Counted from the stretch's first letter, positions 3,596 through 38,742 are shown. The stretch: 64,000 nucleotides of DNA from Marsupella aquatica (GCA_973895155.1 OZ316899.1:4343241-4407240); one strand, 5' to 3'. The notes: generated from the sequence alone by a model not told the origin. Numbers and translations are program-made.

Positions 3596-4508
3596 CGGCA
3601 TAGCAAGTTAGAATAGAGTTAGGTTTAGTCAAGAAGGTCAGACGTTGAGGACAAGCGCCGAAACTAGTTAGTGGCATTGTCCTATCTGACCGACCTCGGA
3701 CTTTTAGCGTAGAATCTTAGAATAAGACACGCCATTTTTTGGCCTGACATACAACAGAATTTAGGATAGACTAGATTCGAGCATGTGGCCATCCCAGGCC
3801 ATGGCTCTTAGTTAGTATTTAGTGCACCCCCTGGTAGAGGCAAGGGAATTTCAGGTTCAGAATTGAATGTCCGCAGGATGTGCGGGGAGTCCCGGCCTTA
3901 GTGAATACAAGAGCACCACGGAGTGAGGGTACAACTAATCTCATCAAGCGAGTGCTGAGCCAGGCTCCGTGTACCGTATGCCTCATTGCCATTGGGCTTG
4001 TTCATTCATAAGAAGTCAAGTCAACCGTGTGTATGTGTATGACGGATTCTGAAGTAAAGTCTTTTCCCCATCATTTCCTTCGTGTAAAACCAGATTGTAT
4101 GTTGTGAATTTCATTGCAATTGTCATTCTTGTATACGTGTAGAAAGCGCTTGGCCAAACGCATTATGTAAGTTGTGCATTGGGTGTCGGCTGCGGATGGG
4201 GTTGCGAGTCTGGGTTGGATGCCCGTATAATCGAATCTAGATTGGAGGCGGACAGCATGAAGGCTTAGAATTCCTTAAGCTGGGGTCAATCACGCGACCC
4301 GTCATGCGATCAACTTAAGGTACGTTCTGGCGGCGGAACACAAAGCATACCTATGATACGTGTAAGAATAGAATTGGGTGCGCTTAGCGCCAAGTTACAA
4401 GAATAAAGTACTGTTTGCACATCCCTCCTTGCCCAAAACCTCAATACTAATGGAGTTTATGCCCGCCTAAGCCAAAATTTGCATAAGGATGGACCTGTTG
4501 GCGGGACA

Positions 4509-22808: not shown

Positions 22809-22902
22809 TGTGATGCCTAGACAGGAATCACTCGGCCGGTTAAGTGGGTAAAGCAGGAAGGCACCCTAGGAACACCTTAGTATAGTGACAAAACAAGGAA
22901 AA

Positions 22903-22908
22903 TATAAA
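22903..22908 (+). promoter_or_regulatory. Candidate TATA box upstream of the LTR-encoded ORF
   Basis: TATAAA 95 nt into the LTR, also present in the solo copy and the 3' LTR. Analogous TATA boxes occur in family B (42520-42526, - strand) and family C (8978-8985, - strand). Confidence 0.4.
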
Positions 22909-23181
22909 CAATTAGGGGCAACCATGGAACCCGGGCCGAGGCCGGAGGTAAGGCTAAGGGTGAAAACCCGATTAGGGTTAGGGCGCGTTAAGCGTCGGCG
23001 GCTAGGAAGGATCAACGGGAAGAAGGACCGGCAAAGGAGAGGGGTAAGGAGCGCTTGCAGGAAATAGTGGCTCATTTGCGAGCACGAACTAGGCAGACGA
23101 CTACGGGAGGCCAACTACTGTCAGCTGCTTAGGCAAGCACTCGGGGAGAGAGTAGATACCGACAATCAACCTAAGGAGGGT

Positions 23182-26100
23182 ATGAGCAACGTCAATCAAG
23201 CGGCACATTTCTGGGGATGCCTGTTCGAACGGGCAACTGAGTACATCAAGACTTACGAGGACGAGGAATCAGAAAGGGCAGCTAGAGAACGGCAGGAGCT
23301 CGCTCGATTGTGGGAGCTGCAGAAGACGGCTTTCTTAGGAGGCGAACTCATCAAGGACGAGTTCCTGTGGACGCCTACTTCCAATCAACTCGACGATCTT
23401 CTGTTTTGCAAAGACAGCGTCGTCGGCATCCGAGAGGCCATCAAGAACTGCAACGACATACACTGGGAATTAAAGGGTAGCACGGAAAGGTGGACCCAGG
23501 CAACGGTGCTAGGAGAAACCTCCACGGCAGCAGAGATGAAGAGGAAGGGAGCCGTCAACGATGAAGCCACCCCGGCAAAAAGAACGAGATCGGCGGCACC
23601 AAAGAAGCCAGCCGAGCAGCAGAGCAGGAGGCAGGGAGAAGCCGAAGAAGAGGAGGTCGATCCCATCAAGGCCATTCCAACCAGGGATGACACCTGGAAG
23701 GGCTGGGCGGCAACCCTACCGGTGGAGGTGCAACTACATTTTGCACGGGAGGAGGATGCATGCTTTACGGCCATGCAGACCAAGAAGTACCAAGGCTTCA
23801 TGGCCGGATCCGGCTTGGAGGCCTTTGTAAGATTACCATGGCTGAAGCCGGAGGTACCGGAGTCAGACCTATTAGAATTCGTGGGGTCATGGGAACCCGA
23901 GACCAATTGCACGAGGATATATGGGAAGGATTTCTATCTTACTCCCAAGGTAATTGCCGAAGTGTTTGGCCTGCCGATAGGCAATAAGACCAAAGTTGAT
24001 ACCAGGAAGACCTTGCCTGACAAGGAGTTCCGGTCGTTCCCCGGGCCATCAACGAAGAATGGCTTCTTCCGGAACACCTGCACCAACCCGCACATAAGAG
24101 AGATGATCGACTTCTTGCGGGTGACCATGCATTGTAACTTGCCGAGGGCAGAGATCGGCAAGGCACAGGTCTATCTGGCAGAAAGGCCAGACCCAAGCCG
24201 GGACTACAACGGGTACCTCCTCAACCAATTGAAGAAGATCTTAAAGGAGGAGCAGCAGGTAATCGGCATGGGGAGCATGTCGCGGCTTGGCTATCACATG
24301 CCGCTGTTGTGCCGGTATGCCAGAGGTCAGACTTTTGCCCCGGTACTTCCCCTGCAGGTAAGGGCACCCGAGGAAGCTCCAACGCCGAGGCCGTTGGCTG
24401 AGAAGCCTCAACCACCTGTTAGTCCTACGATCGAGCAGGTGTTTAGGCCCAGGAAGGAGGACTTGCCGATGCAGCAACCAGGCATGCAGAGTCTGCTGAA
24501 ACTACTGGAGAAAGAAAAGAAATCGGCATCGGCAACAACAACGGCAACGGCAACAATGCAGGACACTACTACAGAGGTAGGCCTACACCGGCTCACAAGA
24601 GAAAACCCCTTTGCTGGAGACAAGGAGAGAATCAGGCCGAAATCCAAGCCAGGTGTTCGAATGTACGTGGGAACCTCAAGCTCCGAATCTGAGGCAGAAT
24701 TGCCTGAAGCTCCTACCGACGAAGAGGAGAGGGAGAAGCCGGACGTCCAAGAGGTAGAGGAGGCAGTGGAGGACTGCAGCCATGATAATTCCGGCTATGG
24801 GTCGGACCATCACGTTCCAGGAGTAAGGACCTGTGGCCGGTTTGTCCCCACACTTCCAAGGGTAGTGCGAGGGGACCCCAACCAGCAGAGTAGCCCTGAG
24901 TCTCCCCCACCAGACGTTGCCCCCCCGAGCTTCGACGGCATAAAACAGACGGTGCAGGAATTTCAGGAGCGAATCAAGCAGGAAGAGGAGGCCGCCCTGG
25001 CTAAGGAAAAGGATTTACCAGGAGGAGATTGGCCGGAGGACATCAGGCGGCTAGCCGAAAAAGGAAGCAAACCTCTAGCCACGATTGAAGAGATCCGCAG
25101 GACGGCTTGGGAGCAGAGGCCACGATGGGCGATGCCGATCACTTCTACTTACTCCACCTACGCTAAGAATAGAGCCATGGAGTATGGTGAGATGTGTGGG
25201 GAACTTGCGCTCGGCATCTTTGGAGAGGAGTTGGAGGTAGGACCCTTTTTCCATAGGGAGCAGTTGGAGAAGCACCAATTAGAAGAAGCGGTGGCTTTAG
25301 AGAGAAGCAAGAAGGACGAGGTCATTCGGCGGCTTAGGAGGATGGAAGCCGAGATTGAAGATCTAAGGGCGGCCAAGAAAGCCCAAGATGAACTGCGGAT
25401 TAAACGACATGAGCTGAACATCATGCAGGGGCAGTTGGACACCGCGCAGGCTGATAATCAGAATATCAAGGATAAACTGACTCAGACGCAGGAAGAGTTG
25501 GCCGACACGATCAAAGAGAGGGAGAAGTGGAAGCAAGAGCTGAAGAATACAGAGGAGGCCCACATAACAGCCAACAGCCGGGCCATGGCGGAGACCCAAA
25601 GAAAGGAATGGGCGTTGAAAGGGGAGCTCGAGAAAATCCGCGGAGCCCTTGAGCAGAAGGAGGCCGAGTTAGGGAAATCCTATCAAGGGATTATGGCGCT
25701 GCAGCAGGAGCTTGCGTCCCTGACGGCCAGCTTCAAGGCCGACCTAAGGGAGAAGGACGAGATGCTCGAACAGACTTACGCCAAGATGAATCAGATGGAG
25801 TCTGTCATCATTGCAGAGCTCGACAAGGAGCTAAGAGCAACCCAGGAGGAGAGGGCTACCTTGAAGAAGGAATTGGAGGAAGCCCACAGGGAGCAGGAGG
25901 AGGCCAAAAACGAGCTGGAGGGGGCACGTAAGGACCTGGATGAAACCCAAGAGGAGTTGGAGGAAATCACGAGGAAGATGGAGAACCTACAGCGGCGGGC
26001 CGACAACCAAACTGAGCGGCTGAAGAAACAAGCCGCAGTATTTAAATGCTTAGCTGCAGCAGGTCCATCTCCCGTTGGGACAAACCAGTTACCAGGGGTG

Positions 26101-26547
26101 GTAATTGCCGAAGGACAGGCCGCGCCACCTGCACCAGTGCCGGAAGTAAGTGGGAAGGGGAAGGGACCAGATGCCGAGCCACCAACGAAGAAGAAGCGGA
26201 AACCTTCAAGGTCAAGGAGTAATACGACTTCACAGGCCGTGGTGATCAAGGAGGTAGACCCAGCACCGACCCCAGACAGGGTCACGGCTAAGGATCCAAC
26301 TACCCTAGGGGAAGGGGAGGCCGAAGCCGAGGGAGTGGCTGAAGCCGAAGCCGTGGGAGTGGCTGAGGCCGAAGCCGTGGGTATTGCCGAGGCCGGTGTC
26401 GAGGCTGAAGCCGAAGGTGGACCCAGTCAGGCCGAGGGAGAGTTGACTCGGTCAAGGGCAGGTAATCTGTCAGTAGGCGGGCCAACGGCAGTGGCTGAGG
26501 GGGAAGTGTTGGGGGCGTCCATTGAGGATCCACCACCGGTGTCGTGA
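23182..26547 (+). CDS. LTR-encoded 1121-aa protein: N-terminal domain, PMD-like core, Pro/acidic linker, long coiled coil, basic KKKRK, Ala/Glu repeats
   Basis: Intact ORF. EFVGSWEPETNCTRIYGKDFYLTPKVIAEVFGLPIG resembles the PMD consensus (ALVERWRPETHTF..GE.TITLQDV..ILGLPI.G). E/K/Q/L-rich heptad region at about aa 700-950. Confidence 0.85.
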   Translation: MSNVNQAAHFWGCLFERATEYIKTYEDEESERAARERQELARLWELQKTAFLGGELIKDEFLWTPTSNQLDDLLFCKDSVVGIREAIKNCNDIHWELKGSTERWTQATVLGETSTAAEMKRKGAVNDEATPAKRTRSAAPKKPAEQQSRRQGEAEEEEVDPIKAIPTRDDTWKGWAATLPVEVQLHFAREEDACFTAMQTKKYQGFMAGSGLEAFVRLPWLKPEVPESDLLEFVGSWEPETNCTRIYGKDFYLTPKVIAEVFGLPIGNKTKVDTRKTLPDKEFRSFPGPSTKNGFFRNTCTNPHIREMIDFLRVTMHCNLPRAEIGKAQVYLAERPDPSRDYNGYLLNQLKKILKEEQQVIGMGSMSRLGYHMPLLCRYARGQTFAPVLPLQVRAPEEAPTPRPLAEKPQPPVSPTIEQVFRPRKEDLPMQQPGMQSLLKLLEKEKKSASATTTATATMQDTTTEVGLHRLTRENPFAGDKERIRPKSKPGVRMYVGTSSSESEAELPEAPTDEEEREKPDVQEVEEAVEDCSHDNSGYGSDHHVPGVRTCGRFVPTLPRVVRGDPNQQSSPESPPPDVAPPSFDGIKQTVQEFQERIKQEEEAALAKEKDLPGGDWPEDIRRLAEKGSKPLATIEEIRRTAWEQRPRWAMPITSTYSTYAKNRAMEYGEMCGELALGIFGEELEVGPFFHREQLEKHQLEEAVALERSKKDEVIRRLRRMEAEIEDLRAAKKAQDELRIKRHELNIMQGQLDTAQADNQNIKDKLTQTQEELADTIKEREKWKQELKNTEEAHITANSRAMAETQRKEWALKGELEKIRGALEQKEAELGKSYQGIMALQQELASLTASFKADLREKDEMLEQTYAKMNQMESVIIAELDKELRATQEERATLKKELEEAHREQEEAKNELEGARKDLDETQEELEEITRKMENLQRRADNQTERLKKQAAVFKCLAAAGPSPVGTNQLPGVVIAEGQAAPPAPVPEVSGKGKGPDAEPPTKKKRKPSRSRSNTTSQAVVIKEVDPAPTPDRVTAKDPTTLGEGEAEAEGVAEAEAVGVAEAEAVGIAEAGVEAEAEGGPSQAEGELTRSRAGNLSVGGPTAVAEGEVLGASIEDPPPVS

Positions 26548-27472
26548 CGGTGCAAGGGCGCCGTTCCTTTTAGGGAGGGCGGACGTGGAGGGAGGAGGCG
26601 TGAGTGGGCAGGGCGGGCGCGGATCTCCACGTTTAGGATTAGGATTAGAACCAGGAGCGGCCCTGACACTTAGCTTAGTGGGATTGCGGTTCCACTGGTA
26701 GGAGCAACACTTGTGCTCCTGCCTTGCTGTACATAGGTAGATTCGGGCAAGTAGATTACTGTCAGGTAGATTAGGCTTACGATGCAAAGAATGGCGGATC
26801 CACTACCAGGATAAGTACCTGGGCAGCGGGGAGCTCAGGGCCTCTTCTTTAGCAAGTTTTTAGTTTGCACCAGCCGGGCTGGGATCAAGTAGTACGAGAA
26901 GCTCTCGGTTAGTCATACAGTGACCCTTGTGTATATTCATGTTTCCTCATGCCTAAGAGCTGAATAGAGTTGGCCTCACGGCTTAGTTCGCAGAACTGGT
27001 GTATGAGATGTACTGTTTGTATGGCAAGTGCATGGTATGACTCAGTCAGAATGAGTCATTTTGCTATTTGTGTGTCGCATTAACTTGTGTGAAGAGTGCC
27101 CACATCAACAGAAGGAAGGAAAGTAAGCAGGGGAGTGAGAGTTGGATGTGTCGAGCTGAGAGAGGTCTTAGCGGCTTAACCAAGCCTATTGGGGATCATT
27201 CCGGCGGCGGAATCCAAACATACCTAACAAGACGGAGGGGAAGACAGGGGAAGACAGGGGAAGACCTATATTAGGCCGGCTACGTATCTCATGACCCGAT
27301 GAAGGATCTGTCCAATATATGTGTGTAAAATGTTAATAGTAGTAGTAGAAGGTTAGCAGCGTCCCATGCCGCTAAGCCGCGGAAATGGCCTCGCCAAGCA
27401 CGAAACCTGCGGGAATCGGCTTGAGCTGGGGGGTTTCTTGGGTTTAGGGAGCCATGGGACGCACCACATTTT

Positions 27473-27490
27473 TGGCGCTAGATGGAGGGG
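27473..27490 (+). other. Primer-binding site, complementary to tRNA-Asn 3' end
   Basis: TGGCGCTAGATGGAGGGG, 4 nt after the LTR. It matches the complement of the plant tRNA-Asn(GUU) 3' end as I recall it (TGGCGCTAGAAGGAGGGG), with 1 mismatch. Confidence 0.75.
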
Positions 27491-27537
27491 GCATTTCTTA
27501 AGCCGTGAGATATGAAGTTAGAACGGAAGCGTAGGTA

Positions 27538-30528
27538 ATGACTGACCTTACGCCGAGGGAAGAAAGAGTGATTCAACGGGAGAGAGCTCGACTGCAGCAG
27601 CTCGCCGGGTGGCATGATACACAGCGACTGAGAGGGGCAGAAAGAGCTGGTAGCTCCGAAACTGGAAGTGGCGTCGAAGAAGACATACCAGAAGAAGAGT
27701 CGGTAAGGAGAAGTGAGTCTACAACCGACATGGGGGAACCAGAGGCACGGCCAGACGAGAGGTCAGGGACCAGATTGAGCCAGCGGTCGCGCATACATTA
27801 CAAGGCATTTCATGGGAGAGGAGATGAGGATCCGGACGAATGGTTGGATGATTTCGAGGGAACCGCTGCAGCAAATGGAGAATCGACCATCAAGATGCAG
27901 ATTCTTCCCGGCCTGTTCAAGGGTGAGGCTAGGCCTTGGTACAGAGCATTAGATGTGGAAGATCAAGCCATCTGGGATATCTTCAAAACACTCTTTGTTA
28001 AGGAGTTTCGACCCATTGGAACTTCAGAACTAGCAGTGCTGAAGTTGGGACAACTTCGGTTCAAGGAGAATAAATCCTTCAGGAAGTTCTTGCAACGCTT
28101 TCAGAAACTGGTAAGACGTACAAAGACCAATGCATCTGAAGGTATGCAACTTCAATGGTTGGTGAATGCTTTGCCACAGAAGATGAGTTTTGCAATTAGG
28201 AAGGAGAACCCAGAGACTTTAGCCGAAGCAATTAAGGATATTCAATTATACATTAATGCAGATATCACAAGCCGGAAGAAACAGCTTAAGTCTGAGAGTT
28301 CCTCATCAGAGGAGGGATCACCACATAAGAAAAAAGATAAGAAGAAGAAACATTCCAAGAAGTCTAGAAGTGATAAGTCAAGCTCGAATAGTGGGAGTAG
28401 CAAGAGTGAGTCATCTTCTAGTTCTGAAGAAGAAAAAACTAGGAAAAGGAAGGGCAGAAGGAGAGGGAAGACGAAAGTCAAGATGGAGGCTAAGCCACCA
28501 GATAACATCGTAGCCCTTACCGAGCAACTTAAAGCTATCATTGCAGAGGTAAAACCAAAGAAGAAGGTAGTACAGGAGGATAGCTCTGTATGGTGTGCCT
28601 TATGTTATAAAACCGGACACCATAAAGATGCGTGTCCTAAGCTTAATACTAATCATGTTCGGCATGTGGCCGAGATCAGACCATGTCAGGGAGAAGTAGA
28701 GTACTTTTTAGGAGATGCCGCTGATAGTGTTTTCGGCATTAGTGAGATTGGAGCACGAGACCTATCCAACAGACCTGCATCTCTGTGGTCAGGGTTAAGG
28801 AACAATCCAGGAGAGATGTATCCTCGGATTATTCAGAACCCGTCAGTACCTCCTAGGCCGAATGTGCAAAGATTTGCGGCGTGCTATAATTGTGGTCAAC
28901 CTGGCCATTTTGCTAGAGAATGCCCGAATGCACGCAAACAGGGTGATGGACAACCAGCTCAGCTATGTATGGGATGCCGACAGGAAGGTCATATGCTAGG
29001 GCAATGTCCTACTTGGTTGGCAGGCCTGGCCGCAAATCATAAGCTTTTGCCGATCAAGATCTTACCGCCAGGTACTACCCCCGGAGGAGTTCAAATCAAC
29101 CACATCGAACTAGGATGGCAAGAGGATGCCGAGGCAGAGTTCGTACCATCTGATGATGAGGCCGAAGCCCTATCAACCTTCTCAGAGGAGGATTTAGATC
29201 ATGATTGCTACCGGGTCTCTACTCGATCTACCAGAAGGAAGGAAAGGTGGGATGGGCTGGCCAAAAATAAAGGGAAGGTTACGGAGGAAAGGATCGACTC
29301 TTCGTCAACATCAACAGAAGGAGAAGGGAGGGCTCCGGCAATACAGGTAAGCCATGAGCCCACCAGTGAACCCAATCCTTCACAAGATAGCGACTTCAAT
29401 CGAGATCATCCTAAGTTGTTCTACCCCTCTGTTACGGCTAGTGTTAAGGAACAACTAAGAGAATTAGAAACCCTGGAGAATACCGAAGCCATTGCCAAAG
29501 ATGTAAAACGAGCAAAAGCATTGTTTGCTTCGGAAGACCCAACAGCTGTGGAGACTAGCGTGGCAAAACTGGCCGAATCCAAGGAAACACCACCAGAGGA
29601 GAAGCCGATTGTTCCCTATGACCTGGCTAAAGATGTACTAGAATCTAGAGTCTCGGCAACAGTAGGTCAACTATTGAAAAATAGCCCGTACTTCCGGAAG
29701 CAATTAAGGAAGGCTATTCTCGGCAAGCCGAGATTACCCAAGGTAGCAACCAGATCCGACGTACTAATGATAGAAGAAGATCAAGGAGCCCCAGCATTAC
29801 CATTAATGATTCAAGGAGAATTATTACTACGGGTACCCATCGATGGAGGATCAGGGGTATGTATTATGATTGATTCAACAACAAAAGGGTGGGGTCTAAC
29901 ACCGGAGATGACTGGAAGAGTGTTGAACATGGCCAATGGATATCAGGTCATTCCTACGGGAGTGTTAACCGGCATCAAGACAGAGATAGGAGGTATCTTC
30001 TTTAGCATTAACTATGTAGTAATGAAGCCGGTAAACCCTACGTCATTCCGGCTATTGATTGGTAGGCCATGGCTGTACCTAGCCGAGGTAATAGAAGATT
30101 GGGGTAAAAAGCAGTTCACTTTCGGGACCCCCTCTATCACAGTATCCTGGGACACTAAGGATGACCGTAGGAAAAGCATAAGGGAAGTAGATGGGTACGA
30201 CAGTGGACTGGAGTCAGCCGATGAAGTACGTTGGTTAGAATGCCTCACTAACCTAACCGAAGAAGGTGTCTTTGGACCTGAGGTACCCCCCAGCGGATTA
30301 TGGCAGGAACCAATGGAAGGTGACTTGGAAGAAGAAGACGCAGAGGTCGAGGACTGCTTTACAATAGAATCCACCTTTTTAGCTGCAATTCCGGAGGAAG
30401 TAAAGGATGTAGACCAATTGGATGAAACGGCTAAGTGGGGAGCAGTAGCAGGGACAGTGAATTTTCTGCAGGCGTTGTGGCAGAGCCGGCAGGGTTCACA
30501 ACGCCATCGATCATCGGCAAGGAATTAA
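27538..30528 (+). CDS. gag: Gag-protease polyprotein (996 aa)
   Basis: Retrotransposon gag-like region (FHGRGDEDPDEWLDDFE); three CCHC knuckles (CALCYKTGHHKDAC, CYNCGQPGHFAREC, CMGCRQEGHMLGQC); aspartic protease VPIDGGSG. Confidence 0.93.
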   Translation: MTDLTPREERVIQRERARLQQLAGWHDTQRLRGAERAGSSETGSGVEEDIPEEESVRRSESTTDMGEPEARPDERSGTRLSQRSRIHYKAFHGRGDEDPDEWLDDFEGTAAANGESTIKMQILPGLFKGEARPWYRALDVEDQAIWDIFKTLFVKEFRPIGTSELAVLKLGQLRFKENKSFRKFLQRFQKLVRRTKTNASEGMQLQWLVNALPQKMSFAIRKENPETLAEAIKDIQLYINADITSRKKQLKSESSSSEEGSPHKKKDKKKKHSKKSRSDKSSSNSGSSKSESSSSSEEEKTRKRKGRRRGKTKVKMEAKPPDNIVALTEQLKAIIAEVKPKKKVVQEDSSVWCALCYKTGHHKDACPKLNTNHVRHVAEIRPCQGEVEYFLGDAADSVFGISEIGARDLSNRPASLWSGLRNNPGEMYPRIIQNPSVPPRPNVQRFAACYNCGQPGHFARECPNARKQGDGQPAQLCMGCRQEGHMLGQCPTWLAGLAANHKLLPIKILPPGTTPGGVQINHIELGWQEDAEAEFVPSDDEAEALSTFSEEDLDHDCYRVSTRSTRRKERWDGLAKNKGKVTEERIDSSSTSTEGEGRAPAIQVSHEPTSEPNPSQDSDFNRDHPKLFYPSVTASVKEQLRELETLENTEAIAKDVKRAKALFASEDPTAVETSVAKLAESKETPPEEKPIVPYDLAKDVLESRVSATVGQLLKNSPYFRKQLRKAILGKPRLPKVATRSDVLMIEEDQGAPALPLMIQGELLLRVPIDGGSGVCIMIDSTTKGWGLTPEMTGRVLNMANGYQVIPTGVLTGIKTEIGGIFFSINYVVMKPVNPTSFRLLIGRPWLYLAEVIEDWGKKQFTFGTPSITVSWDTKDDRRKSIREVDGYDSGLESADEVRWLECLTNLTEEGVFGPEVPPSGLWQEPMEGDLEEEDAEVEDCFTIESTFLAAIPEEVKDVDQLDETAKWGAVAGTVNFLQALWQSRQGSQRHRSSARN

Positions 30529-33500
30529 ATACCAAGGGATCGGCATACAAGCCGATTACGAGGGCAGAACAAATTGAGGCCCTATTAGAAGCCGAGAGAG
30601 CACAGCGGCCTAACTCTCAGGAGCAAGAGGTGGATGAGATGGACAGACACGATCCAGAGCCAAGGCAGGAAGGGGAGCCGACCACTAATTCAAAACCGAA
30701 TAGACCGGTAAGGGGACAATCTATGGACACCAAGGAAGGGACCGACTCGGCTAGTCCAGCCGAAATCCCAGTTTATGGAGGTATGAGATTAGAGAGACTG
30801 GAAGCCGAACTGGACCCGAATTTGAAGAAGCAGATTAATATGATCCAAGCACGGCAATATCGGAAGCTCGACTTAGGAGAGGGAAGAGAACTGAACTTAG
30901 GGAGAAATCTAGCACCTGAGCTCGAGAAAGAGATTAGTGACTTATTGATTGAATTTCAGGATGTGTTTGCATGGAGTCACCAAGATCTAAAGGGAGTAGA
31001 TCCAACACTAGGGGAACATCGAATTGATCTCATGCTGGGAGCCAAATCATTCCGACAACCAATTCGAAGGATGAACCCGAAGTATTCCCTGCTGGTCAAA
31101 ACAGAAATCGACAAACTAGTGGAAGCTGGATTCATCACTCCAGTCCTGCATTCAGACTGGGTGTCTCCAATTGTGATAGTTCCCAAGAAAGCTAGACCCG
31201 ATGGTAAACCCAAGATCCGGGTTTGTCAGGATTACAGGAAGCTGAATGAAGCAACATTAAAAGACCATTTTCCTTTACCGTTTACTGATATGGTACTAGA
31301 CATGGTAGCCAGTCATGAACTATATTCATTCATGGATGGATACTCTGGTTATAACCAAATCCGGATTCGGCAGGAAGACCAAATCAAGACGGCCTTCATC
31401 ACGGAATGGGGGATCTATGTCTTCAATCGTATGCCGTTTGGACTCTGCAATGCACCAGCTATGTTCCAACGATTAATGGTGAACATTTTCCATGATTACT
31501 TGAGAAAGTTCATGGAAATCTTCATTGATGACTTTGCAGTATTCGGGAAGGCATCGAAACATGCTAAATACCTCAGAAAAACCTTCATGAGATGTAGAGA
31601 GGTGGGTCTCAAGTTACACCCAGATAAATGTTTTTTTGCAGTAACCGAGGGGGTGCTACTAGGTCACAAGGTATCAAGGAAGGGCATTGAGATTGACAAA
31701 GGTAAGCTAGCAGTATGGCTAGATATCATGCAACCTAAGAACATAAAGGATGTAAGATCCTTCTTGGGATGCATTGGTTACTATCGCCGGTTCATCAAGG
31801 ATTTTGCCAAGCTAGCTTTACCATTAACCAATATGCTCAAGGCAGGAGCAGACTTCGAACCCACACCCGAACGAGTCACAGCGGTGGTAGAATTGAAGCA
31901 GATGTTAGTAGAGGCCCCAGTCATGATAGCACCGGACTGGAACAAAGATTTTCATGTTTTTGTAGATGTCTCGGGCTTCTGTATTGGCTCAGTACTAAGT
32001 CAGTTGGATGAGAAAGGAAGGGACCATCCCATATACTTCGCAAGCCGTCAGCTTACCGATGCCGAACGGAACTACTCTACCACGGAAAGAGAAGCATTAG
32101 GAGTCATTTATTCTTGTAAAAAGTTTAGGCATTATTTACTAGGGTACAAGGTAATCTTTCATACTGATCATGAAAGTTTGAAGTACCTAGTCAATAAGCC
32201 GGACCTTACAGGCAGAGTAGCAAGATGGATTTTGCTATTACAGGAGTTTGACTATGAGCTGAGGATCAAACCGGGAAAGTTACATGCCAATGCCGACTTC
32301 TTTTCAAGGATCACAGGTAAACCTGCCACGGATTGCATCGATGATCGATTCCCCGACGAGGAGCTATTCGTTGTGGAAATAGCTGGTACATGGTACCCTG
32401 AGATTTTACAATTTCTCAGCACTTCCAGATTACAGCCAGGATTAAGCCGAGAGCAAGCCGCAGTCTTTGTGCGGAAGGTCAGACAGTATCAGTGCATTAA
32501 AGGCATACTGCACAAGCATGGAATCAACGGCACGATTCAAAGATGTTTGGAAAAGAGAGAGGTAAAACGAGTCCTACGGGCCATGCATGGAGAGGAGGCC
32601 GGAGGACATTTTGCCCCAGTAACCACGTCTAAGAAGATATTAAATGCCGGTTACTGGTGGCCCACCTTGCACAAAGATGTCTATCAGTTTATCAAACAAT
32701 GCGATCCTTGTCAACGAGCGGGAGGACCAAGGGCGTCCACCAGGCATCCACTGCACCCTATTCTACCTCTGGCACCATTCGAGAAGTGGGGTATTGATTA
32801 CATTGGACCTCTGAAACCACTGACCCACCCTCGACGGAACAAGTACATAATCCTGGCTACGGATTATGCAACTAAATGGGTAGAGGCCAGACCAACAACG
32901 AAGGATGATGCAATTACTACGGCTAGATTCATGTATGAGCAGATCTTCACCAGGTATGGAGCACCCCTAGAATTAGTTAGTGATAGAGGAACCCAGTTTT
33001 TGAATGATATAATTAGTCGTTTAAATGAGCAGTATTTAGTTAAACATAGGCCTACTACTCCCTACCATCCAAAGGCAAACGGGTTGACAGAACGAGCAAA
33101 CGGAATTATAGGAAAGATATTGAACAAGACAGTAGCTCAGAACAAACTCGATTGGGATGATAAATTGTTTGCTGCTGTTTTTGCTTACAATCTTGCCTAT
33201 AAATCCACTACCGGTCATACACCCTTCTTCTTAACCTTTGGACAAGAAGCCCTGGTACCCACGCAACTTGAGATACCGACATTTCAAGTTACAATTGAGG
33301 AAAGAGCCTCAGCGGAGGAGAGCCTAAAGGAGCGAGAATATAGGTTAGAAGCTTTAGAGGAAGCGAGAATGATTTCAGCCGAGAGAGTAGAATATAGACA
33401 GAATATCATGAAGCAGCAGTATGATAAAAGGTTAAAAGTAGTTAGTATTCATACCGGTGATCTTGTGCTACTTTATGACAGTAGGTATAGTAGGTTTCCA

Positions 33501-33701
33501 GGAAAGCTTTACACTCGCTGGTTAGGACCCTTTAGAGTAACCATGATGTTCCCCAATGGCTCCGTACAATTGGCCAACATTACGGGAGAGGTATATCCAG
33601 TTCGCATCCATTATGACCGCCTCAAGAAATACTATATGGACGAAGATGAAGTTGTTCGCGAGGACGCTTCACAATTAAGTGGGGAGCTATGTGATGCCTA
33701 G
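30435..33701 (+). CDS. pol: Pol (RT-RNase H-integrase), -1 frame relative to gag-PR
   Basis: KDHFPLP, MDGYSGYNQI, MPFGLCNAP, FIDDF (RT); VDVSGFCIG, YSTTEREAL (RH); H..GGH..CDPC, WGIDYIG, SDRGTQF, ERANG, WLGPF (IN). The stop codon lies inside the 3' LTR. Confidence 0.96.
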   Translation: MGSSSRDSEFSAGVVAEPAGFTTPSIIGKELNTKGSAYKPITRAEQIEALLEAERAQRPNSQEQEVDEMDRHDPEPRQEGEPTTNSKPNRPVRGQSMDTKEGTDSASPAEIPVYGGMRLERLEAELDPNLKKQINMIQARQYRKLDLGEGRELNLGRNLAPELEKEISDLLIEFQDVFAWSHQDLKGVDPTLGEHRIDLMLGAKSFRQPIRRMNPKYSLLVKTEIDKLVEAGFITPVLHSDWVSPIVIVPKKARPDGKPKIRVCQDYRKLNEATLKDHFPLPFTDMVLDMVASHELYSFMDGYSGYNQIRIRQEDQIKTAFITEWGIYVFNRMPFGLCNAPAMFQRLMVNIFHDYLRKFMEIFIDDFAVFGKASKHAKYLRKTFMRCREVGLKLHPDKCFFAVTEGVLLGHKVSRKGIEIDKGKLAVWLDIMQPKNIKDVRSFLGCIGYYRRFIKDFAKLALPLTNMLKAGADFEPTPERVTAVVELKQMLVEAPVMIAPDWNKDFHVFVDVSGFCIGSVLSQLDEKGRDHPIYFASRQLTDAERNYSTTEREALGVIYSCKKFRHYLLGYKVIFHTDHESLKYLVNKPDLTGRVARWILLLQEFDYELRIKPGKLHANADFFSRITGKPATDCIDDRFPDEELFVVEIAGTWYPEILQFLSTSRLQPGLSREQAAVFVRKVRQYQCIKGILHKHGINGTIQRCLEKREVKRVLRAMHGEEAGGHFAPVTTSKKILNAGYWWPTLHKDVYQFIKQCDPCQRAGGPRASTRHPLHPILPLAPFEKWGIDYIGPLKPLTHPRRNKYIILATDYATKWVEARPTTKDDAITTARFMYEQIFTRYGAPLELVSDRGTQFLNDIISRLNEQYLVKHRPTTPYHPKANGLTERANGIIGKILNKTVAQNKLDWDDKLFAAVFAYNLAYKSTTGHTPFFLTFGQEALVPTQLEIPTFQVTIEERASAEESLKEREYRLEALEEARMISAERVEYRQNIMKQQYDKRLKVVSIHTGDLVLLYDSRYSRFPGKLYTRWLGPFRVTMMFPNGSVQLANITGEVYPVRIHYDRLKKYYMDEDEVVREDASQLSGELCDA
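30459..30518 (+). promoter_or_regulatory. Candidate -1 ribosomal frameshift signal
   Basis: G_AAT_TTT in the gag frame, a 5-nt spacer, then a perfect 9-bp stem GGCGTTGTG (30471-30479) / CACAACGCC (30497-30505). Confidence 0.6.
33677..33689 (+). other. Polypurine tract
   Basis: AAGTGGGGAG followed by CTA, immediately before the 3' LTR TG. It lies within pol coding sequence. Confidence 0.75.
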
Positions 33702-36700
33702 ACAGGAATCACTCGGCCGGTTAAGTGGGTAAAGCAGGAAGGCACCCTAGGAACACCTTAGTATAGTGACAAAACAAGGAAAATATAAACAATTAGGGGC
33801 AACCATGGAACCCGGGCCGAGGCCGGAGGTAAGGCTAAGGGTGAAAACCCGATTAGGGTTAGGGCGCGTTAAGCGTCGGCGGCTAGGAAGGATCAACGGG
33901 AAGAAGGACCGGCAAAGGAGAGGGGTAAGGAGCGCTTGCAGGAAATAGTGGCTCATTTGCGAGCACGAACTAGGCAGACGACTACGGGAGGCCAACTACT
34001 GTCAGCTGCTTAGGCAAGCACTCGGGGAGAGAGTAGATACCGACGATCAACCTAAGGAGGGTATGAGCAACGTCAATCAAGCGGCACATTTCTGGGGATG
34101 CCTGTTCGAACGGGCAATTGAGTACATCAAGACTTACGAGGACGAGGAATCAGAAAGGGCAGCTAGAGAACGGCAGGAGCTCGCTCGATTGTGGGAGCTG
34201 CAGAAGACGGCTTTCTTAGGAGGCGAACTCATCAAGGACGAGTTCCTGTGGACGCCTACTTCCAATCAACTCGACGATCTTCTGTCTTGCAAAGACAGCG
34301 TCGTCGGCATCCGAGAGGCCATCAAGAACTGCAACGACATACACTGGGAATTAAAGGGTAGCACGGAAAGGTGGACCCAGGCAACGGTGCTAGGAGAAAC
34401 CTCCACGGCAGCAGAGATGAAGAGGAAGGGAGCCATCAACGATGAAGCCACCCCGGCAAAAAGAACGAGATCGGCGGCACCAAAGAAGCCAGCCGAGCAG
34501 CAGAGCAGGAGGCAGGGAGAAGCCGAAGAAGAGGAGGTCGATCCCATCAAGGCCATTCCAACCAGGGATGACACCTGGAAGGGCTGGGCGGCAACCCTAC
34601 CGGTGGAGGTGCAACTACATTTTGCACGGGAGGAGGATGCATGCTTTACGGCCATGCAGACCAAGAAGTACCAAGGCTTCATGGCCGGATCCGGCTTGGA
34701 GGCCTTTGTAAGATTACCATGGCTGAAGCCGGAGGTACCGGAGTCAGACCTATTAGAATTCGTGGGGTCATGGGAACCCGAGACCAATTGCACGAGGATA
34801 TATGGGAAGGATTTCTATCTTACTCTCAAGGTAATTGCCGAAGTGTTTGGCCTGCCGATAGGCAATAAGACCAAAGTTGATACCAGGAAGACCTTGCCTG
34901 ACAAGGAGTTCCGGTCGTTCCCCGGGCCATCAACGAAGAATGGCTTCTTCCGGAACACCTGCACCAACCCGCACATAGGAGAGATGATCGACTTCTTGCG
35001 GGTGACCATGCATTGTAACTTGCCGAGGGCAGAGATCGGCAAGGCACAGGTCTATCTGGCAGAAAGGCCAGACCCAAGCCGGGACTACAACGGGTACCTC
35101 CTCAACCAATTGAAGAAGATCTTAAAGGAGGAGCAGCAGGTAATCGGCATGGGGAGCGTGTCGCGGCTTGGCTATCACATGCCGCTGTTGTGCCGGTATG
35201 CCAGAGGTCAGACTTTTGCCCCGGTACTTCCCCTGCAGGTAAGGGCACCCGAGGAAGCTCCAACGCCGAGGCCGTTGGCTGAGAAGCCTCAACCACCTGT
35301 TAGTCCTACGATCGAGCAGGTGTTTAGGCCCAGGAAGGAGGACTTGCCGATGCAGCAACCAGGCATGCAGAGTCTGCTGAAACTACTGGAGAAAGAAAAG
35401 AAATTGGCATCGGCAACAACAACGGCAACGGCAACAATGCAGGACACTACTACAGAGGTAGGCCTACACCGGCTCACAAGAGAAAACCCCTTTGCTGGAG
35501 ACAAGGAGAGAATCAGGCCGAAATCCAAGCCAGGTGTTCGAATGTACGTGGGAACCTCAAGCTCCGAATCTGAGGCAGAATTGCCTGAAGCTCCTACCGA
35601 CGAAGAGGAGAGGGAGAAGCCGGACGTCCAAGAGGTAGAGGAGGCAGTGGAGGACTGCAGCCATGATAATTCCGGCTATGGGTCGGACCATCACGTTCCA
35701 GGAGTAAGGACCTATGGCCGGTTTGTCCCCACACTTCCAAGGGTAGTGCGAGGGGACCCCAACCAGCAGAGTAGCCCTGAGTCTCCCCCACCAGACGTTG
35801 CCCCCCCGAGCTTCGACGGCATAAAACAGACGGTGCAGGAATTTCAGGAGCGAATCAAGCAGGAAGAGGAGGCCGCCCTGGCTAAGGAAAAGGATTTACC
35901 AGGAGGAGATTGGCCGGAGGACATCAGGCGGCTAGCCGAAAAAGGAAGCAAACCTCTAGCCACGATTGAAGAGATCCGCAGGACGGCTTGGGAGCAGAGG
36001 CCACGATGGGCGATGCCGATCACTTCTACTTACTCCACCTACGCTAAGAATAGAGCCATGGAGTATGGTGAGATGTGTGGGGAACTTGCGCTCGGCATCT
36101 TTGGAGAGGAGTTGGAGGTAGGACCCTTTTTCCATAGGGAGCAGTTGGAGAAGCACCAATTAGAAGAAGCGGTGGCTTTAGAGAGAAGCAAGAAGGACGA
36201 GGTCATTCGGCGGCTTAGGAGGATGGAAGCCGAGATTGAAGATCTAAGGGCGGCCAAGAAAGCCCAAGATGAACTGCGGATTAAACGACATGAGCTGAAC
36301 ATCATGCAGGGGCAGTTGGACACCGCGCAGGCTGATAATCAGAATATCAAGGATAAACTGACTCAGACGCAGGAAGAGTTGGCCGACACGATCAAAGAGA
36401 GGGAGAAGTGGAAGCAAGAGCTGAAGAATACAGAGGAGGCCCACATAACAGCCAACAGCCGGGCCATGGCGGAGACCCAAAGAAAGGAATGGGCGTTGAA
36501 AGGGGAGCTCGAGAAAATCCGCGGAGCCCTTGAGCAGAAGGAGGCCGAGTTAGGGAAATCCTATCAAGGGATTATGGCGCTGCAGCAGGAGCTTGCGTCC
36601 CTGACGGCCAGCTTCAAGGCCGACCTAAGGGAGAAGGACGAGATGCTCGAACAGACTTACGCCAAGATGAATCAGATGGAGTCTGTCATCATTGCAGAGC

Positions 36701-38349
36701 TCGACAAGGAGCTAAGAGCAACCCAGGAGGAGAGGGCTACCTTGAAGAAGGAATTGGAGGAAGCCCACAGGGAGCAGGAGGAGGCCAAAAACGAGCTGGA
36801 GGGGGCACGTAAGGACCTGGATGAAACCCAAGAGGAGTTGGAGGAAATCACGAGGAAGATGGAGAACCTACAGCGGCGGGCCGACAACCAAACTGAGCGG
36901 CTGAAGAAACAAGCCGCAGTATTTAAATGCTTAGCTGCAGCAGGTCCATCTCCCGTTGGGACAAACCAGTTACCAGGGGTGGTAATTGCCGAAGGACAGG
37001 CCGCGCCACCTGCACCAGTGCCAGAAGTAAGTGGGAAGGGGAAGGGACCAGATGCCGAGCCACCAACGAAGAAGAAGCGGAAACCTTCAAGGTCAAGGAG
37101 TAATACGACTTCACAGGCCGTGGTGATCAAGGAGGTAGACCCAGCACCGACCCCAGACAGGGTCACGGCTAAGGATCCAACTACCCTAGGGGAAGGGGAG
37201 GCCGAAGCCGAGGGAGTGGCTGAAGCCGAAGCCGTGGGAGTGGCTGAGGCCGAAGCCGTGGGTATTGCCGAGGCCGGTGTCGAGGCTGAAGCCGAAGGTG
37301 GACCCAGTCAGGCCGAGGGAGAGTTGACTCGGTCAAGGGCAGGTAATCTGTCAGTAGGCGGGCCAACGGCAGTGGCTGAGGGGGAAGTGTTGGGGGCGTC
37401 CATTGAGGATCCACCACCGGTGTCGTGACGGTGCAAGGGCGCCGTTCCTTTTAGGGAGGGCGGACGTGGAGGGAGGAGGCGTGAGTGGGCAGGGCGGGCG
37501 CGGATCTCCACGTTTAGGATTAGGATTAGAACCAGGAGCGGCCCTGACACTTAGCTTAGTGGGATTGCGGTTCCACTGGTAGGAGCAACACTTGTGCTCC
37601 TGCCTTGCTGTACATAGGTAGATTCGGGCAAGTAGATTACTGTCAGGTAGATTAGGCTTACGATGCAAAGAATGGCGGATCCACTACCAGGATAAGTACC
37701 TGGGCAGCGGGGAGCTCAGGGCCTCTTCTTTAGCAAGTTTTTAGTTTGCACCAGCCGGGCTGGGATCAAGTAGTACGAGAAGCTCTCGGTTAGTCATACA
37801 GTGACCCTTGTGTATATTCATGTTTCCTCATGCCTAAGAGCTGAATAGAGTTGGCCTCACGGCTTAGTTCGCAGAACTGGTGTATGAGATGTACTGTTTG
37901 TATGGCAAGTGCATGGTATGACTCAGTCAGAATGAGTCATTTTGCTATTTGTGTGTCGCATTAACTTGTGTGAAGAGTGCCCACATCAACAGAAGGAAGG
38001 AAAGTAAGCAGGGGAGTGAGAGTTGGATGTGTCGAGCTGAGAGAGGTCTTAGCGGCTTAACCAAGCCTATTGGGGATCATTCCGGCGGCGGAATCCAAAC
38101 ATACCTAACAAGACGGAGGGGAAGACAGGGGAAGACAGGGGAAGACCTATATTAGGCCGGCTACGTATCTCATGACCCGATGAAGGATCTGTCCAATATA
38201 TGTGTGTAAAATGTTAATAGTAGTAGTAGAAGGTTAGCAGCGTCCCATGCCGCTAAGCCGCGGAAATGGCCTCGCCAAGCACGAAACCTGCGGGAATCGG
38301 CTTGAGCTGGGGGGTTTCTTGGGTTTAGGGAGCCATGGGACGCACCACA
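33690..38349 (+). repeat. 3' (middle) LTR, 4660 bp
   Basis: Copy of 22809-27468; I counted 10 substitutions, all transitions. Confidence 0.95.
34063..37428 (+). CDS. Second intact copy of the LTR-encoded 1121-aa PMD-like protein
   Basis: Eight amino-acid differences from 23182-26547. Confidence 0.85.
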   Translation: MSNVNQAAHFWGCLFERAIEYIKTYEDEESERAARERQELARLWELQKTAFLGGELIKDEFLWTPTSNQLDDLLSCKDSVVGIREAIKNCNDIHWELKGSTERWTQATVLGETSTAAEMKRKGAINDEATPAKRTRSAAPKKPAEQQSRRQGEAEEEEVDPIKAIPTRDDTWKGWAATLPVEVQLHFAREEDACFTAMQTKKYQGFMAGSGLEAFVRLPWLKPEVPESDLLEFVGSWEPETNCTRIYGKDFYLTLKVIAEVFGLPIGNKTKVDTRKTLPDKEFRSFPGPSTKNGFFRNTCTNPHIGEMIDFLRVTMHCNLPRAEIGKAQVYLAERPDPSRDYNGYLLNQLKKILKEEQQVIGMGSVSRLGYHMPLLCRYARGQTFAPVLPLQVRAPEEAPTPRPLAEKPQPPVSPTIEQVFRPRKEDLPMQQPGMQSLLKLLEKEKKLASATTTATATMQDTTTEVGLHRLTRENPFAGDKERIRPKSKPGVRMYVGTSSSESEAELPEAPTDEEEREKPDVQEVEEAVEDCSHDNSGYGSDHHVPGVRTYGRFVPTLPRVVRGDPNQQSSPESPPPDVAPPSFDGIKQTVQEFQERIKQEEEAALAKEKDLPGGDWPEDIRRLAEKGSKPLATIEEIRRTAWEQRPRWAMPITSTYSTYAKNRAMEYGEMCGELALGIFGEELEVGPFFHREQLEKHQLEEAVALERSKKDEVIRRLRRMEAEIEDLRAAKKAQDELRIKRHELNIMQGQLDTAQADNQNIKDKLTQTQEELADTIKEREKWKQELKNTEEAHITANSRAMAETQRKEWALKGELEKIRGALEQKEAELGKSYQGIMALQQELASLTASFKADLREKDEMLEQTYAKMNQMESVIIAELDKELRATQEERATLKKELEEAHREQEEAKNELEGARKDLDETQEELEEITRKMENLQRRADNQTERLKKQAAVFKCLAAAGPSPVGTNQLPGVVIAEGQAAPPAPVPEVSGKGKGPDAEPPTKKKRKPSRSRSNTTSQAVVIKEVDPAPTPDRVTAKDPTTLGEGEAEAEGVAEAEAVGVAEAEAVGIAEAGVEAEAEGGPSQAEGELTRSRAGNLSVGGPTAVAEGEVLGASIEDPPPVS

Positions 38350-38742
38350 TTTTTGGCGCTAGATGGAGGGGGCATTTCTTAAGCCGTGAGATATGAAGTT
38401 AGAACGGAAGCGTAGGTAATGACTGACCTTACGCCGAGGGAAGAAAGAGTGATTCAACGGGAGAGAGCTCGACTGCAGCAGCTCGCCGGGTGGCATGATA
38501 CACAGCGACTGAGAGGGGCAGAAAGAGCTGGTAGCTCCGAAACTGGAAGTGGCGTCGAAGAAGACATACCAGAAGAAGAGTCGGTAAGGAGAAGTGAGTC
38601 TACAACCGACATGGGGGAACCAGAGGCACGGCCAGACGAGAGGTCAGGGACCAGATTGAGCCAGCGGTCGCGCATACATTACAAGGCATTTCATGGGAGA
38701 GGAGATGAGGATCCGGACGAATGGTTGGATGATTTCGAGGGA
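38350..38742 (+). pseudogene. gag: Second PBS (38354-38371) and truncated gag start of a tandem unit
   Basis: Identical to 27469-27861, then breaks abruptly after ...GATTTCGAGGGA into unrelated sequence. Confidence 0.93.

What the first reader, a model, noticed from the sequence alone, without database searches (positions are those of the whole stretch)
22809..38349. Giant LTRs that contain a complete protein-coding gene (1121-aa PMD-like protein)
Seen: each 4660-bp LTR, bounded by TG..CA with the PBS after it and the PPT before it, holds an intact 3.4-kb ORF. Three solo LTRs with 5-bp TSDs (15649-20322 GTCTG; 38885-42885 ACGCA; 5410-9303 CCTAA/ACTAA) each contain the whole ORF, so the gene is part of the LTR and not of the internal region. 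Known: extra ORFs of Athila/Tat/Ogre elements usually lie between the LTR and gag or after pol, and LTR-embedded genes are known mainly from retroviruses (MMTV sag, HIV nef). Gypsy-associated PMDs exist, and the host PMD proteins MAIN/MAIL1 act in TE silencing. Inference: each insertion delivers two gene copies, and solo-LTR formation, the host's usual way of removing elements, leaves the gene behind. It is a plausible trans-acting anti-silencing or chromatin factor.
Basis: partly seen in the sequence, partly recalled or inferred. Interest (0 to 1): 0.92.

Follow-up and report, generated by a model that had tools for sequence, protein, structure and literature searches.

The report
Accessory gene inside giant retrotransposon LTRs
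A young Ty3/gypsy retrotransposon, probably in a liverwort genome, carries a complete 1121-codon accessory gene under purifying selection inside each of its 4.66-kb terminal repeats; this layout also occurs in Calypogeia fissa, but the protein shows no detectable likeness to the plant mobile domain and its function is unknown.

Summary
Confirmed: two 4660-bp LTRs (10 differences), TG..CA ends, PBS after the 5' LTR and PPT before the 3' LTR. They flank intact gag-PR and RT-RNaseH-integrase ORFs, and each LTR holds an intact 1121-aa ORF. The ORF is a real gene: dN/dS is 0.21 against a 92%-identical solo LTR (p = 2e-20; 1.2 and 1.6 in the control frames).

The layout is not a local accident. Two Calypogeia fissa elements with the same PBS and PPT carry a homologous ORF inside 5-kb LTRs. 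A more distant C. fissa relative with 1.7-kb LTRs carries the homologue in the internal region, between pol and its PPT. The simplest reading is that a classical 3' accessory ORF was taken into U3 when plus-strand priming moved to the end of pol.

Not confirmed:
- None of the three solo LTRs holds the whole ORF; all are broken.
- The 3' LTR is followed by a 393-bp restart of the internal region, so the full element has no checkable right-hand TSD.
- No PMD, PF20167 or other Pfam, PDB-sequence or fold match exists for the protein or 19 relatives.

The protein has a new roughly 235-aa domain, two basic NLS-like motifs and a 264-residue helix. An anti-silencing role is untested speculation.

The parts
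22809..27468 (+). 5' LTR of the full-length element (family F1), 4660 bp, TG..CA
   Evidence: 10 differences from the 3' LTR; the PBS follows it
23182..26547 (+). Accessory ORF (aORF) copy 1, 1121 aa, intact, at LTR positions 374-3739
   Evidence: dN/dS 0.21 against the solo copy
23704..24411 (+). Conserved domain of the aORF protein (about aa 175-410); no named family
   Evidence: 21 relatives among 1.84 billion representatives. No Pfam, PDB or fold match
25255..26046 (+). Predicted single long alpha-helix (aa 692-955), coiled-coil-like
   Evidence: pLDDT above 90; weak coiled-coil Pfam hits
27199..27279 (+). Promoter-like module downstream of the aORF: a conserved 14-mer, three tandem 10-mers and a TATA-like box
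   Evidence: conserved across otherwise unalignable LTR families; aligns with the canonical TATA box of the short-LTR relative L005
27473..27491 (+). Primer binding site
   Evidence: identical 19-mer in C. fissa L001 and L006
27538..30528 (+). gag-protease ORF, 996 aa, intact
   Evidence: Retrotrans_gag, zf-CCHC; protease-like motifs seen by eye, no Pfam protease hit
30433..30443 (+). Second copy of the PPT core at the gag/pol junction (candidate central PPT)
   Evidence: a similar copy sits at the equivalent place in L001 and L006
30435..33701 (+). pol ORF, 1088 aa, intact, -1 frame relative to gag; its last 12 nt lie in the LTR
   Evidence: RVT_1, RT_RNaseH, Integrase_H2C2, rve
33673..33689 (+). 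Polypurine tract, inside the 3' end of the pol coding sequence
   Evidence: identical in L001 and L006
33690..38349 (+). 3' LTR
34063..37428 (+). aORF copy 2, 1121 aa, intact; 9 nt differences from copy 1 (8 nonsynonymous, 1 synonymous)
38350..38742 (+). Restart of the internal region (PBS plus the first 108 gag codons), identical to 27469-27861, ending at an abrupt junction
15649..20322 (-). Solo LTR of family F1, TSD GTCTG on both sides
16555..19946 (-). Broken aORF in the F1 solo LTR: 2 stops, 3 frameshifting indels, 5 in-frame indels
   Evidence: counts only
38885..42885 (-). Solo LTR of family F2 (4001 bp), TSD ACGCA on both sides; degenerate aORF
61370..64000 (-). Second F2 LTR copy (93.8% identical), cut by the window end; degenerate aORF
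5410..9303 (-). Solo LTR of family F3 (3894 bp), imperfect TSD CCTAA/ACTAA; degenerate aORF
2664..4508 (+). 3' part of a further related LTR (about 66-76% identical to F2); approximate right end

Best explanation
The element is a non-chromodomain Ty3/gypsy LTR retrotransposon from a lineage that so far has relatives only in liverwort data. A sense-strand accessory ORF that normally sits between pol and the 3' LTR has become part of the LTR.

SHOWN
- The PPT lies inside the last codons of pol, and the LTR starts 12 nt before the pol stop. Everything downstream of pol, including the 3.4-kb aORF, is therefore copied to both ends at reverse transcription.
- The aORF is kept by purifying selection while the family propagates, and it decays once a copy is stranded.
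- A related C. fissa element with 1.7-kb LTRs has the homologous ORF in the internal region, upstream of its PPT.

INFERRED
- Plus-strand priming moved from downstream to upstream of the aORF, so that the new U3 equals the aORF plus the old U3.
- The promoter, R and U5 lie in the last 200-300 nt of the LTR, where the only blocks conserved between families are found.
- The 3' LTR copy is therefore the expressed one, as the 3' part of the genomic transcript. It is probably read from a spliced subgenomic RNA; a donor-like AG|GTRATG motif overlaps the gag start codon in both species.
- The 5' LTR and solo-LTR copies lie upstream of the promoter and are largely silent.
- The protein is nuclear and self-associating: a new roughly 235-aa domain, a disordered linker, a 264-residue helix and two basic NLS-like motifs.
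- It serves the element's own replication. My best guess is handling of unspliced genomic RNA in the nucleus, in the manner of Cer1 CERV. This last step has low confidence.
For: ARCHITECTURE
- LTR bounds, PBS and PPT.
- Identical PBS and PPT, and an aORF homologue wholly inside the 5' LTR, in C. fissa L001 (LTR 8748 to about 13651, ORF 10001-11557) and L006 (LTR 9016 to about 14146, ORF 10001-11893). Their pol is 55-68% identical to the window's pol.
- TSD-flanked solo LTRs of three families carry the domain.

INTERNAL VERSION
- L005 has 1666-bp LTRs that are 97% identical, then gag and pol, then the 889-aa homologue P0034 at 10001-12670, then a PPT and the 3' LTR at 12851.

CODING
- dN/dS is 0.21 against 1.2 and 1.62 in the other frames, p = 2e-20; differences by codon position are 41/31/97.
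- The F2 family gives 0.27 against 1.78 and 0.89.
- Between the two LTRs of one element the differences are 8 nonsynonymous to 1 synonymous, as expected for neutral change after insertion.

PROMOTER DOWNSTREAM OF THE aORF
- The post-ORF 920 nt is the most conserved part of the LTR: 97.1% against 91.9% for the ORF.
- A 14-mer is exact in F1 and F2, and a TATA-like block aligns with the canonical TATA box of L005, 150-270 nt from the LTR ends.

PROTEIN
- Domain family of 21 representatives; long helix; basic motifs; no transmembrane segment.
- CERV precedent: PMC10309623.
Against: - No transcript data exist, so the U3/R/U5 bounds, splicing and translation are all unproven.
- The only canonical TATAAA in the LTR lies at LTR position 95, upstream of the aORF.
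- The TATA-like block is degenerate in several of the old copies, and the order of the conserved blocks differs between F1 and the other families.
- The direction of change is not rooted by a phylogeny; it could have run from LTR-embedded to internal.
- The C. fissa 3' LTRs are seen only for their first 1.4-1.5 kb, because the loci end there.
- The protein's function has no homology support at all.
Confidence: 0.6

Rival explanations
1. Each LTR is a self-contained gene. A promoter upstream of the aORF (the TATAAA at LTR position 95) drives an mRNA that ends at a poly(A) site near the LTR's 3' end. The aORF would then lie in R/U5, and solo LTRs would remain expressible.
For: The only canonical TATA box in the LTR lies 280 nt upstream of the start codon.
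Against: - One TATA[AT]A in 4660 bp is fewer than the roughly 2.6 expected by chance.
- It is absent from the equivalent region of C. fissa L001 and L006.
- It would require an R region of more than 4 kb, far beyond anything known to me.
- All three solo copies are broken.
- The blocks conserved between families lie downstream of the ORF.
Confidence: 0.15
2. One reading: the protein is a PMD-like chromatin or anti-silencing factor, delivered in two copies and left behind in solo LTRs to act in trans.
For: PMD is the non-canonical domain most often found in angiosperm gypsy elements (PMC9289625). The protein looks nuclear. The short helix-strand-strand-helix segment of the model does not exclude a remote relation.
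Against: - No PF10536 or PF20167 hit for the domain at E up to 10, and none for any of 20 family members at E up to 1 or three full-length C. fissa homologues at E up to 0.1.
- A profile of the family found nothing among PDB sequences.
- Foldseek found nothing in the PDB or BFVD.
- The solo copies are pseudogenes.
Confidence: 0.1
3. The 4-4.7-kb units are not LTRs. They would be separate non-autonomous elements, or a host gene recently transduced into a single element.
For: The LTRs are unusually long. In C. fissa, L007 and L008 carry homologues with no gag or pol within 10 kb.
Against: - The units have no terminal repeats of their own.
- The PBS and PPT abut them exactly.
- The same layout occurs in another species, with pol 55-68% identical.
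- At least three diverged families in this window carry the domain, so this is not a one-off capture.
- All relatives whose context could be read lie in or next to such elements, or in LTR-like units.
Confidence: 0.04

Closest known systems
Sense additional ORFs between pol and the 3' LTR of plant Ty3/gypsy elements (aORF-3S; Athila and Bagy2 'env-like'), reviewed in PMC7264820
   Same: A sense-strand extra ORF downstream of pol, conserved across a lineage, faster-evolving than pol, and probably needing a subgenomic RNA. The C. fissa relative L005 has exactly this layout with a homologous ORF.
   Different: Here the PPT lies upstream of the ORF, so the ORF belongs to the LTR and is duplicated. 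The review describes additional ORFs only in the internal region. There is no transmembrane segment and no sequence similarity to any named family.
Retroviral genes lying in or overlapping U3 (MMTV sag, primate lentivirus nef, foamy virus bel/bet); from my own knowledge
   Same: An accessory coding sequence located after the PPT, so that it is present in both LTRs of the integrated copy and is read from the 3' part of the transcript.
   Different: This is an analogy of position only. There is no homology, the host is a plant, the ORF is far longer (3.4 kb), and its placement in U3 is inferred here rather than mapped.
Rice Retrosat2, RIRE3 and RIRE8 (PMC3485330) and Ogre/Tat elements with LTRs above 3 kb
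   Same: Gypsy elements with unusually long LTRs and a lineage-specific extra ORF of unknown function that evolves faster than gag-pol.
   Different: Their ORF0/ORF1 lies in the internal region, upstream of gag. The LTRs themselves are non-coding. The ORFs are not homologous.
Cer1 CERV of C. elegans (PMC10309623)
   Same: A lineage-restricted protein encoded in the env position of a gypsy-type element, made from a spliced RNA, nuclear, self-assembling, and needed for export of unspliced genomic RNA. This is a possible model for the function.
   Different: No sequence relation. The function here is a guess. CERV is not encoded in an LTR.
Cassandra TRIM elements carrying 5S RNA gene sequences in their LTRs; from my own knowledge
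   Same: A plant LTR element whose LTR embeds a gene-like unit, so that solo LTRs also carry it.
   Different: That is a short Pol III RNA gene in a non-autonomous element, not a 1121-codon protein gene in an autonomous one.

Membership tests
Ty3/gypsy (Metaviridae) LTR retrotransposon | pol domain order RT - RNase H - integrase | tested here: met
   RVT_1 at aa 250-412, RT_RNaseH at 501-605, Integrase_H2C2 at 707-762, rve at 780-879
Ty3/gypsy (Metaviridae) LTR retrotransposon | gag with capsid-like domain and CCHC knuckle; protease | tested here: met
   Retrotrans_gag 6.6e-10, zf-CCHC 1.6e-8. The protease was seen only as motifs by eye, with no Pfam hit
Ty3/gypsy (Metaviridae) LTR retrotransposon | Direct LTRs with TG..CA ends, PBS, PPT and a 5-bp TSD | tested here: met
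   The TSD is perfect for two solo LTRs and 4 of 5 for the third. It cannot be checked for the full element, because the 3' LTR is followed by a restart of the internal region
Chromovirus | Chromodomain at the C-terminus of integrase | tested here: not met
   no chromo hit in pol or in its last 233 aa
Tat lineage (Ogre, Retand, TatI-III) | Second, archaeal-type RNase H domain | tested here: not met
   only about 100 aa lie between the RNase H and the integrase zinc-binding domain, with no second RNase H hit. Liverwort 'Tat Z2' elements are reported to lack it (PMC13468544), so the clade itself needs an RT phylogeny, which was not done
Plant mobile domain (PF10536) and PF20167 | Significant match to the family HMM | tested here: not met
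   no hit for the whole protein (E up to 0.01), its three N-terminal pieces (aa 1-673, including the domain; E up to 10), 20 family members (E up to 1) or three full-length homologues (E up to 0.1)
Plant mobile domain (PF10536) and PF20167 | Shared fold | not testable with these tools
   I know of no solved PMD structure, and AlphaFold DB was not available. The model (pLDDT 69.5) matched nothing in the PDB or BFVD
env-like aORF (Athila / Bagy2 type) | Sense ORF between pol and the 3' LTR, with transmembrane segment(s) | tested here: not met
   In the window the ORF lies in the LTR, not in the internal region. The maximum Kyte-Doolittle 19-residue mean is 0.98, so there is no transmembrane segment
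Solo LTR | A single LTR copy flanked by a TSD, without internal region and without terminal repeats of its own | tested here: met
Functional protein-coding gene | dN/dS well below 1 in the coding frame only | tested here: met

The most novel reading that the evidence does not exclude
A liverwort lineage of LTR retrotransposons has moved an accessory gene into U3 of the LTR, as some retroviruses have done, by shifting the plus-strand priming site. The gene encodes a protein domain with no detectable relative in named families or solved structures. The protein is a nuclear, filament-forming factor that the element needs, for example to export or protect its unspliced RNA or to counter silencing. 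This would be the first described protein-coding LTR in a plant retrotransposon, and both the internal and the LTR-embedded versions survive in one genome.
Probability: 0.4. Interest if true: 0.8.

Novelty: new variant of a known kind. Interest (0 to 1): 0.66.

Why it matters
- LTRs are treated as non-coding control regions, and annotation pipelines mask them or cap their length. A 1121-codon gene under selection inside a 4.7-kb LTR shows that such pipelines can miss both the element and its gene.
- Having the internal and the LTR-embedded version of one accessory gene in related elements gives a natural comparison. It can show how the PPT position sets LTR content, and how retrovirus-like U3 genes can arise.
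- Giant coding LTRs also enlarge the target for LTR-LTR recombination. This window holds three solo LTRs and one LTR-internal-LTR-internal recombinant.
- The protein defines an unnamed domain family. So far it is found only in Calypogeia fissa and in unidentified read-assembly and metagenome contigs.

Tried and rejected
SEARCHES THAT FOUND NOTHING
- Word-indexed protein searches with the whole protein, with its domain region, and with the family profile returned nothing new.
- ARAGORN found no tRNA gene in the window or the loci, so the PBS could not be assigned to a tRNA.
- Logan contigs L003 and L004 are degraded copies without informative context. The best homologue's contig had no retrievable DNA.
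- Literature searches for ORFs within LTRs of retrotransposons found no plant precedent in the held library. That is not proof of absence.

IDEAS CONSIDERED AND REJECTED
- That 38885-42885 and 61370-64000 are the two LTRs of one element. The first has its own TSD and a paralogous empty site, and no gag or pol lies between them.
- That the upstream TATAAA is the promoter. It is not conserved and is no more than chance would give.
- A relic PPT just after the aORF stop, and a PPT-like run at the pol end of L005. I noticed both but found them too weak to use.

Full report
ANATOMY

The window (48.9% G+C) is a nest of transposable elements. It includes a plant-type CACTA transposase at 51650-54818 on the minus strand.

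Self-comparison shows one full-length element:
- LTRs at 22809-27468 and 33690-38349, each 4660 bp, differing at 10 positions, starting TGTGA and ending CACA.
- The 5' LTR is followed after 4 nt by TGGCGCTAGATGGAGGGGG, a PBS-like motif.
- The 3' LTR is preceded by AATTAAGTGGGGAGCTA, a purine-rich PPT.
- Between the LTRs lie an intact 996-aa gag ORF (Retrotrans_gag and zf-CCHC; protease-like motifs near its end) and, in the -1 frame, an intact 1088-aa pol ORF (RVT_1, RT_RNaseH, Integrase_H2C2, rve).
- The pol stop codon lies 12 nt inside the LTR, so the PPT sits within the pol coding sequence.
- No chromodomain and no second RNase H was found.

The element is therefore a Ty3/gypsy element of the non-chromovirus kind. 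Its finer lineage was not tested. Liverwort Tat-like elements are reported to lack the extra RNase H (PMC13468544).

THE ORF IN THE LTR

Each LTR holds an intact 1121-aa ORF at LTR positions 374-3739.

It is a real gene. I compared 895 gaplessly aligned codons with the solo LTR at 15649-20322:
- dS = 0.176, dN = 0.037, ratio 0.21.
- The two other frames give ratios of 1.2 and 1.62.
- Differences fall 41/31/97 by codon position.
- The deficit of nonsynonymous change has p = 2e-20.

A second family (38885-42885 against 61370-64000) gives 0.27 in the coding frame of the conserved domain, against 1.78 and 0.89 in the control frames. Between the two LTRs of the full element, 9 of the 10 differences lie in the ORF, and 8 of those are nonsynonymous. 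That is what neutral change after insertion should look like.

1. The direct repeat is 5053 bp, not 4660 bp. After the 3' LTR come a second PBS and the first 108 gag codons (38350-38742), identical to 27469-27861, and then an abrupt junction. The full element therefore has no checkable right-hand TSD; its left flank reads CCCCT. The structure fits an LTR-internal-LTR-internal recombinant cut short by a deletion. An assembly artefact cannot be excluded.

2. None of the three solo LTRs holds the whole ORF.
   - The same-family solo (TSD GTCTG on both sides) has 2 in-frame stops, 3 frameshifting indels and 5 in-frame indels.
   - The units at 38885-42885 (TSD ACGCA) and 5410-9303 (CCTAA/ACTAA) belong to other families and lie on the minus strand.
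   - These two match the ORF only at 25-28% identity over a 150-230-aa domain. That domain contains 1-2 stops, and the longest open stretches are 296 and 226 aa.

They are nevertheless genuine solo LTRs. The flanks of 38885-42885 are collinear with an uninterrupted paralogous site near 10809-10940. None of the units has terminal repeats of its own.

RELATIVES ELSEWHERE

An exhaustive HMMER search with residues 165-425 found only 21 representatives among 1.84 billion proteins. Those with a named source are unnamed proteins of the leafy liverwort Calypogeia fissa. The others come from read-assembly (Logan) and metagenome contigs.

Their genomic contexts settle the architecture:
- In C. fissa loci L001 and L006 the PBS and PPT are identical to the window's, and the LTR starts TGTGAGG immediately after pol.
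- pol there is 55-68% identical to the window's pol.
- The homologous ORF lies wholly inside a 5' LTR of about 5 kb: 518 aa in L001 and 630 aa in L006.
- In locus L005, whose pol is only 39-47% identical, the LTRs are 1666 bp long and 97% identical.
- There the 889-aa homologue lies in the internal region, after pol and before a PPT that abuts the 3' LTR.

The ORF is therefore an accessory gene of this clade, and its position relative to the PPT differs between sublineages. The review of plant additional ORFs (PMC7264820) describes them only in internal regions. The long-LTR rice family Retrosat2 also keeps its extra ORF internal (PMC3485330).

HOW IT MOST LIKELY WORKS

Shown: because the PPT precedes the ORF, reverse transcription copies the ORF to both ends of the element.

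Inferred: priming moved from downstream of the ORF to the end of pol, so the new U3 equals the ORF plus the old U3. Three observations place the promoter downstream of the ORF:
- The 920 nt after the ORF are the best-conserved part of the LTR: 97.1% identity, against 91.9% for the ORF and 94.1% for the 373 nt before it.
- The only blocks shared by otherwise unalignable LTR families lie 180-270 nt before the LTR end. They include a 14-mer that is exact in F1 and F2, and a TATA-like block preceded in F1 by three tandem 10-mers.
- That block aligns with the canonical TATA box of the short-LTR element L005, which lies about 155 nt before its LTR end.

On this model the 3' copy of the ORF is the 3' end of the genomic transcript, in the same order as in L005, and would need a subgenomic RNA. 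A donor-like AG|GTRATG motif overlaps the gag start codon both in the window and in C. fissa, although the rest of the leader is unalignable. This is suggestive only.

The 5' LTR and solo copies would lie upstream of the promoter. That agrees with the decay of all three solo copies.

The rival model has a promoter at the single TATAAA at LTR position 95 and an R region of more than 4 kb. It is weaker, because that motif is not conserved and is no more than chance would give.

THE PROTEIN

Its parts, from the N-terminus:
- an acidic N-terminal region with a basic KRTR motif;
- a conserved domain of about 235 aa (AlphaFold2 model with 20 sequences, mean pLDDT 69.5, mixed helix and short strands);
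- a proline-rich and acidic linker;
- one continuous predicted helix spanning residues 692-955 (pLDDT above 90);
- a KKKRK motif;
- a low-complexity tail.

There is no transmembrane segment.

No named relative was found by any search:
- Pfam gave nothing but weak coiled-coil noise. The plant mobile domain (PF10536) and PF20167 were never hit by the whole protein (E up to 0.01), its three N-terminal pieces (aa 1-673; E up to 10), 20 family members (E up to 1) or three full-length homologues (E up to 0.1).
- A family profile found nothing among PDB sequences.
- Foldseek found nothing in the PDB or BFVD.

The PMD likeness is therefore not supported. A very remote relation cannot be excluded without a profile-profile comparison or AlphaFold DB.

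I take the protein to be nuclear and self-associating, and needed in the element's own cycle. A CERV-like role in handling unspliced RNA (PMC10309623) is my preferred guess, and anti-silencing is an alternative. Both are untested.

VERDICT

The core observation is real, and it extends to a second species. It is a new variant of a known kind: an additional ORF of a gypsy element, placed inside the LTR as in some retroviruses.

The PMD label, the claim of intact ORFs in solo LTRs and the clean right-hand end are wrong. The functional inference is unsupported.

2. Before I applied the rule on breaks, the script printed separate alignment bounds that bracket one break in the solo LTR's ORF, and my first notebook entry says roughly where that ORF is interrupted. 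Later scripts print counts only.

Noticed in passing
window 30433-30443; L001:16856; L006:17329: The 11-nt core of the PPT recurs exactly at the gag/pol junction of the window's element. It recurs with one mismatch at the equivalent place in both C. fissa elements. This is a candidate central polypurine tract.
   Followed up: partly
window 9985-22808 (interrupted by 15649-20322) and 38743-38884 + 42886-49311: Two copies (about 68% identical) of an unidentified repeat of at least 7 kb host the LTR insertions. Each has an ORF of about 469 aa (20406-21815; homologue at 47496-48903) with no Pfam hit. In addition, 22296-22808 resembles 9985-10509 at 59%, which hints at a tandem or LTR-like organisation of this older repeat.
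   Followed up: partly
window 1-1006 and 1657-2663: A direct duplication (93.7% identical, period 1656 bp) lies immediately upstream of the partial F2-like LTR at 2664-4508.
   Followed up: no
window 51650-54818 (-): A CACTA-type transposase (Transposase_21, DUF4218, DUF4216) is split into two ORFs of 385 and 641 aa. It lies between the two F2 LTR copies.
   Followed up: no
window 27199-27212, 38080-38093, 15895-15908, 39055-39068, 61540-61553: The near-palindromic 14-mer TTCCGGCGGCGGAA is exact in all five copies of two LTR families that are otherwise unalignable. It lies 180-270 nt before the LTR end and is a likely cis-regulatory site.
   Followed up: partly
L007:10001-12034 and L008:10001-11287 (C. 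fissa): Homologues of the LTR protein (P0015, P0018) have no gag or pol within 10 kb on either side. They may lie in solo LTRs or be stand-alone copies; I did not resolve which.
   Followed up: partly
window 27538-30528 (gag-PR): The protease-like region reads D-G-G-S-G where D-S/T-G is usual, and no Pfam protease model matches it.
   Followed up: no
window 58028-59233 (+): A 401-aa ORF with no Pfam hit lies in the region between the CACTA transposase and the second F2 LTR.
   Followed up: no
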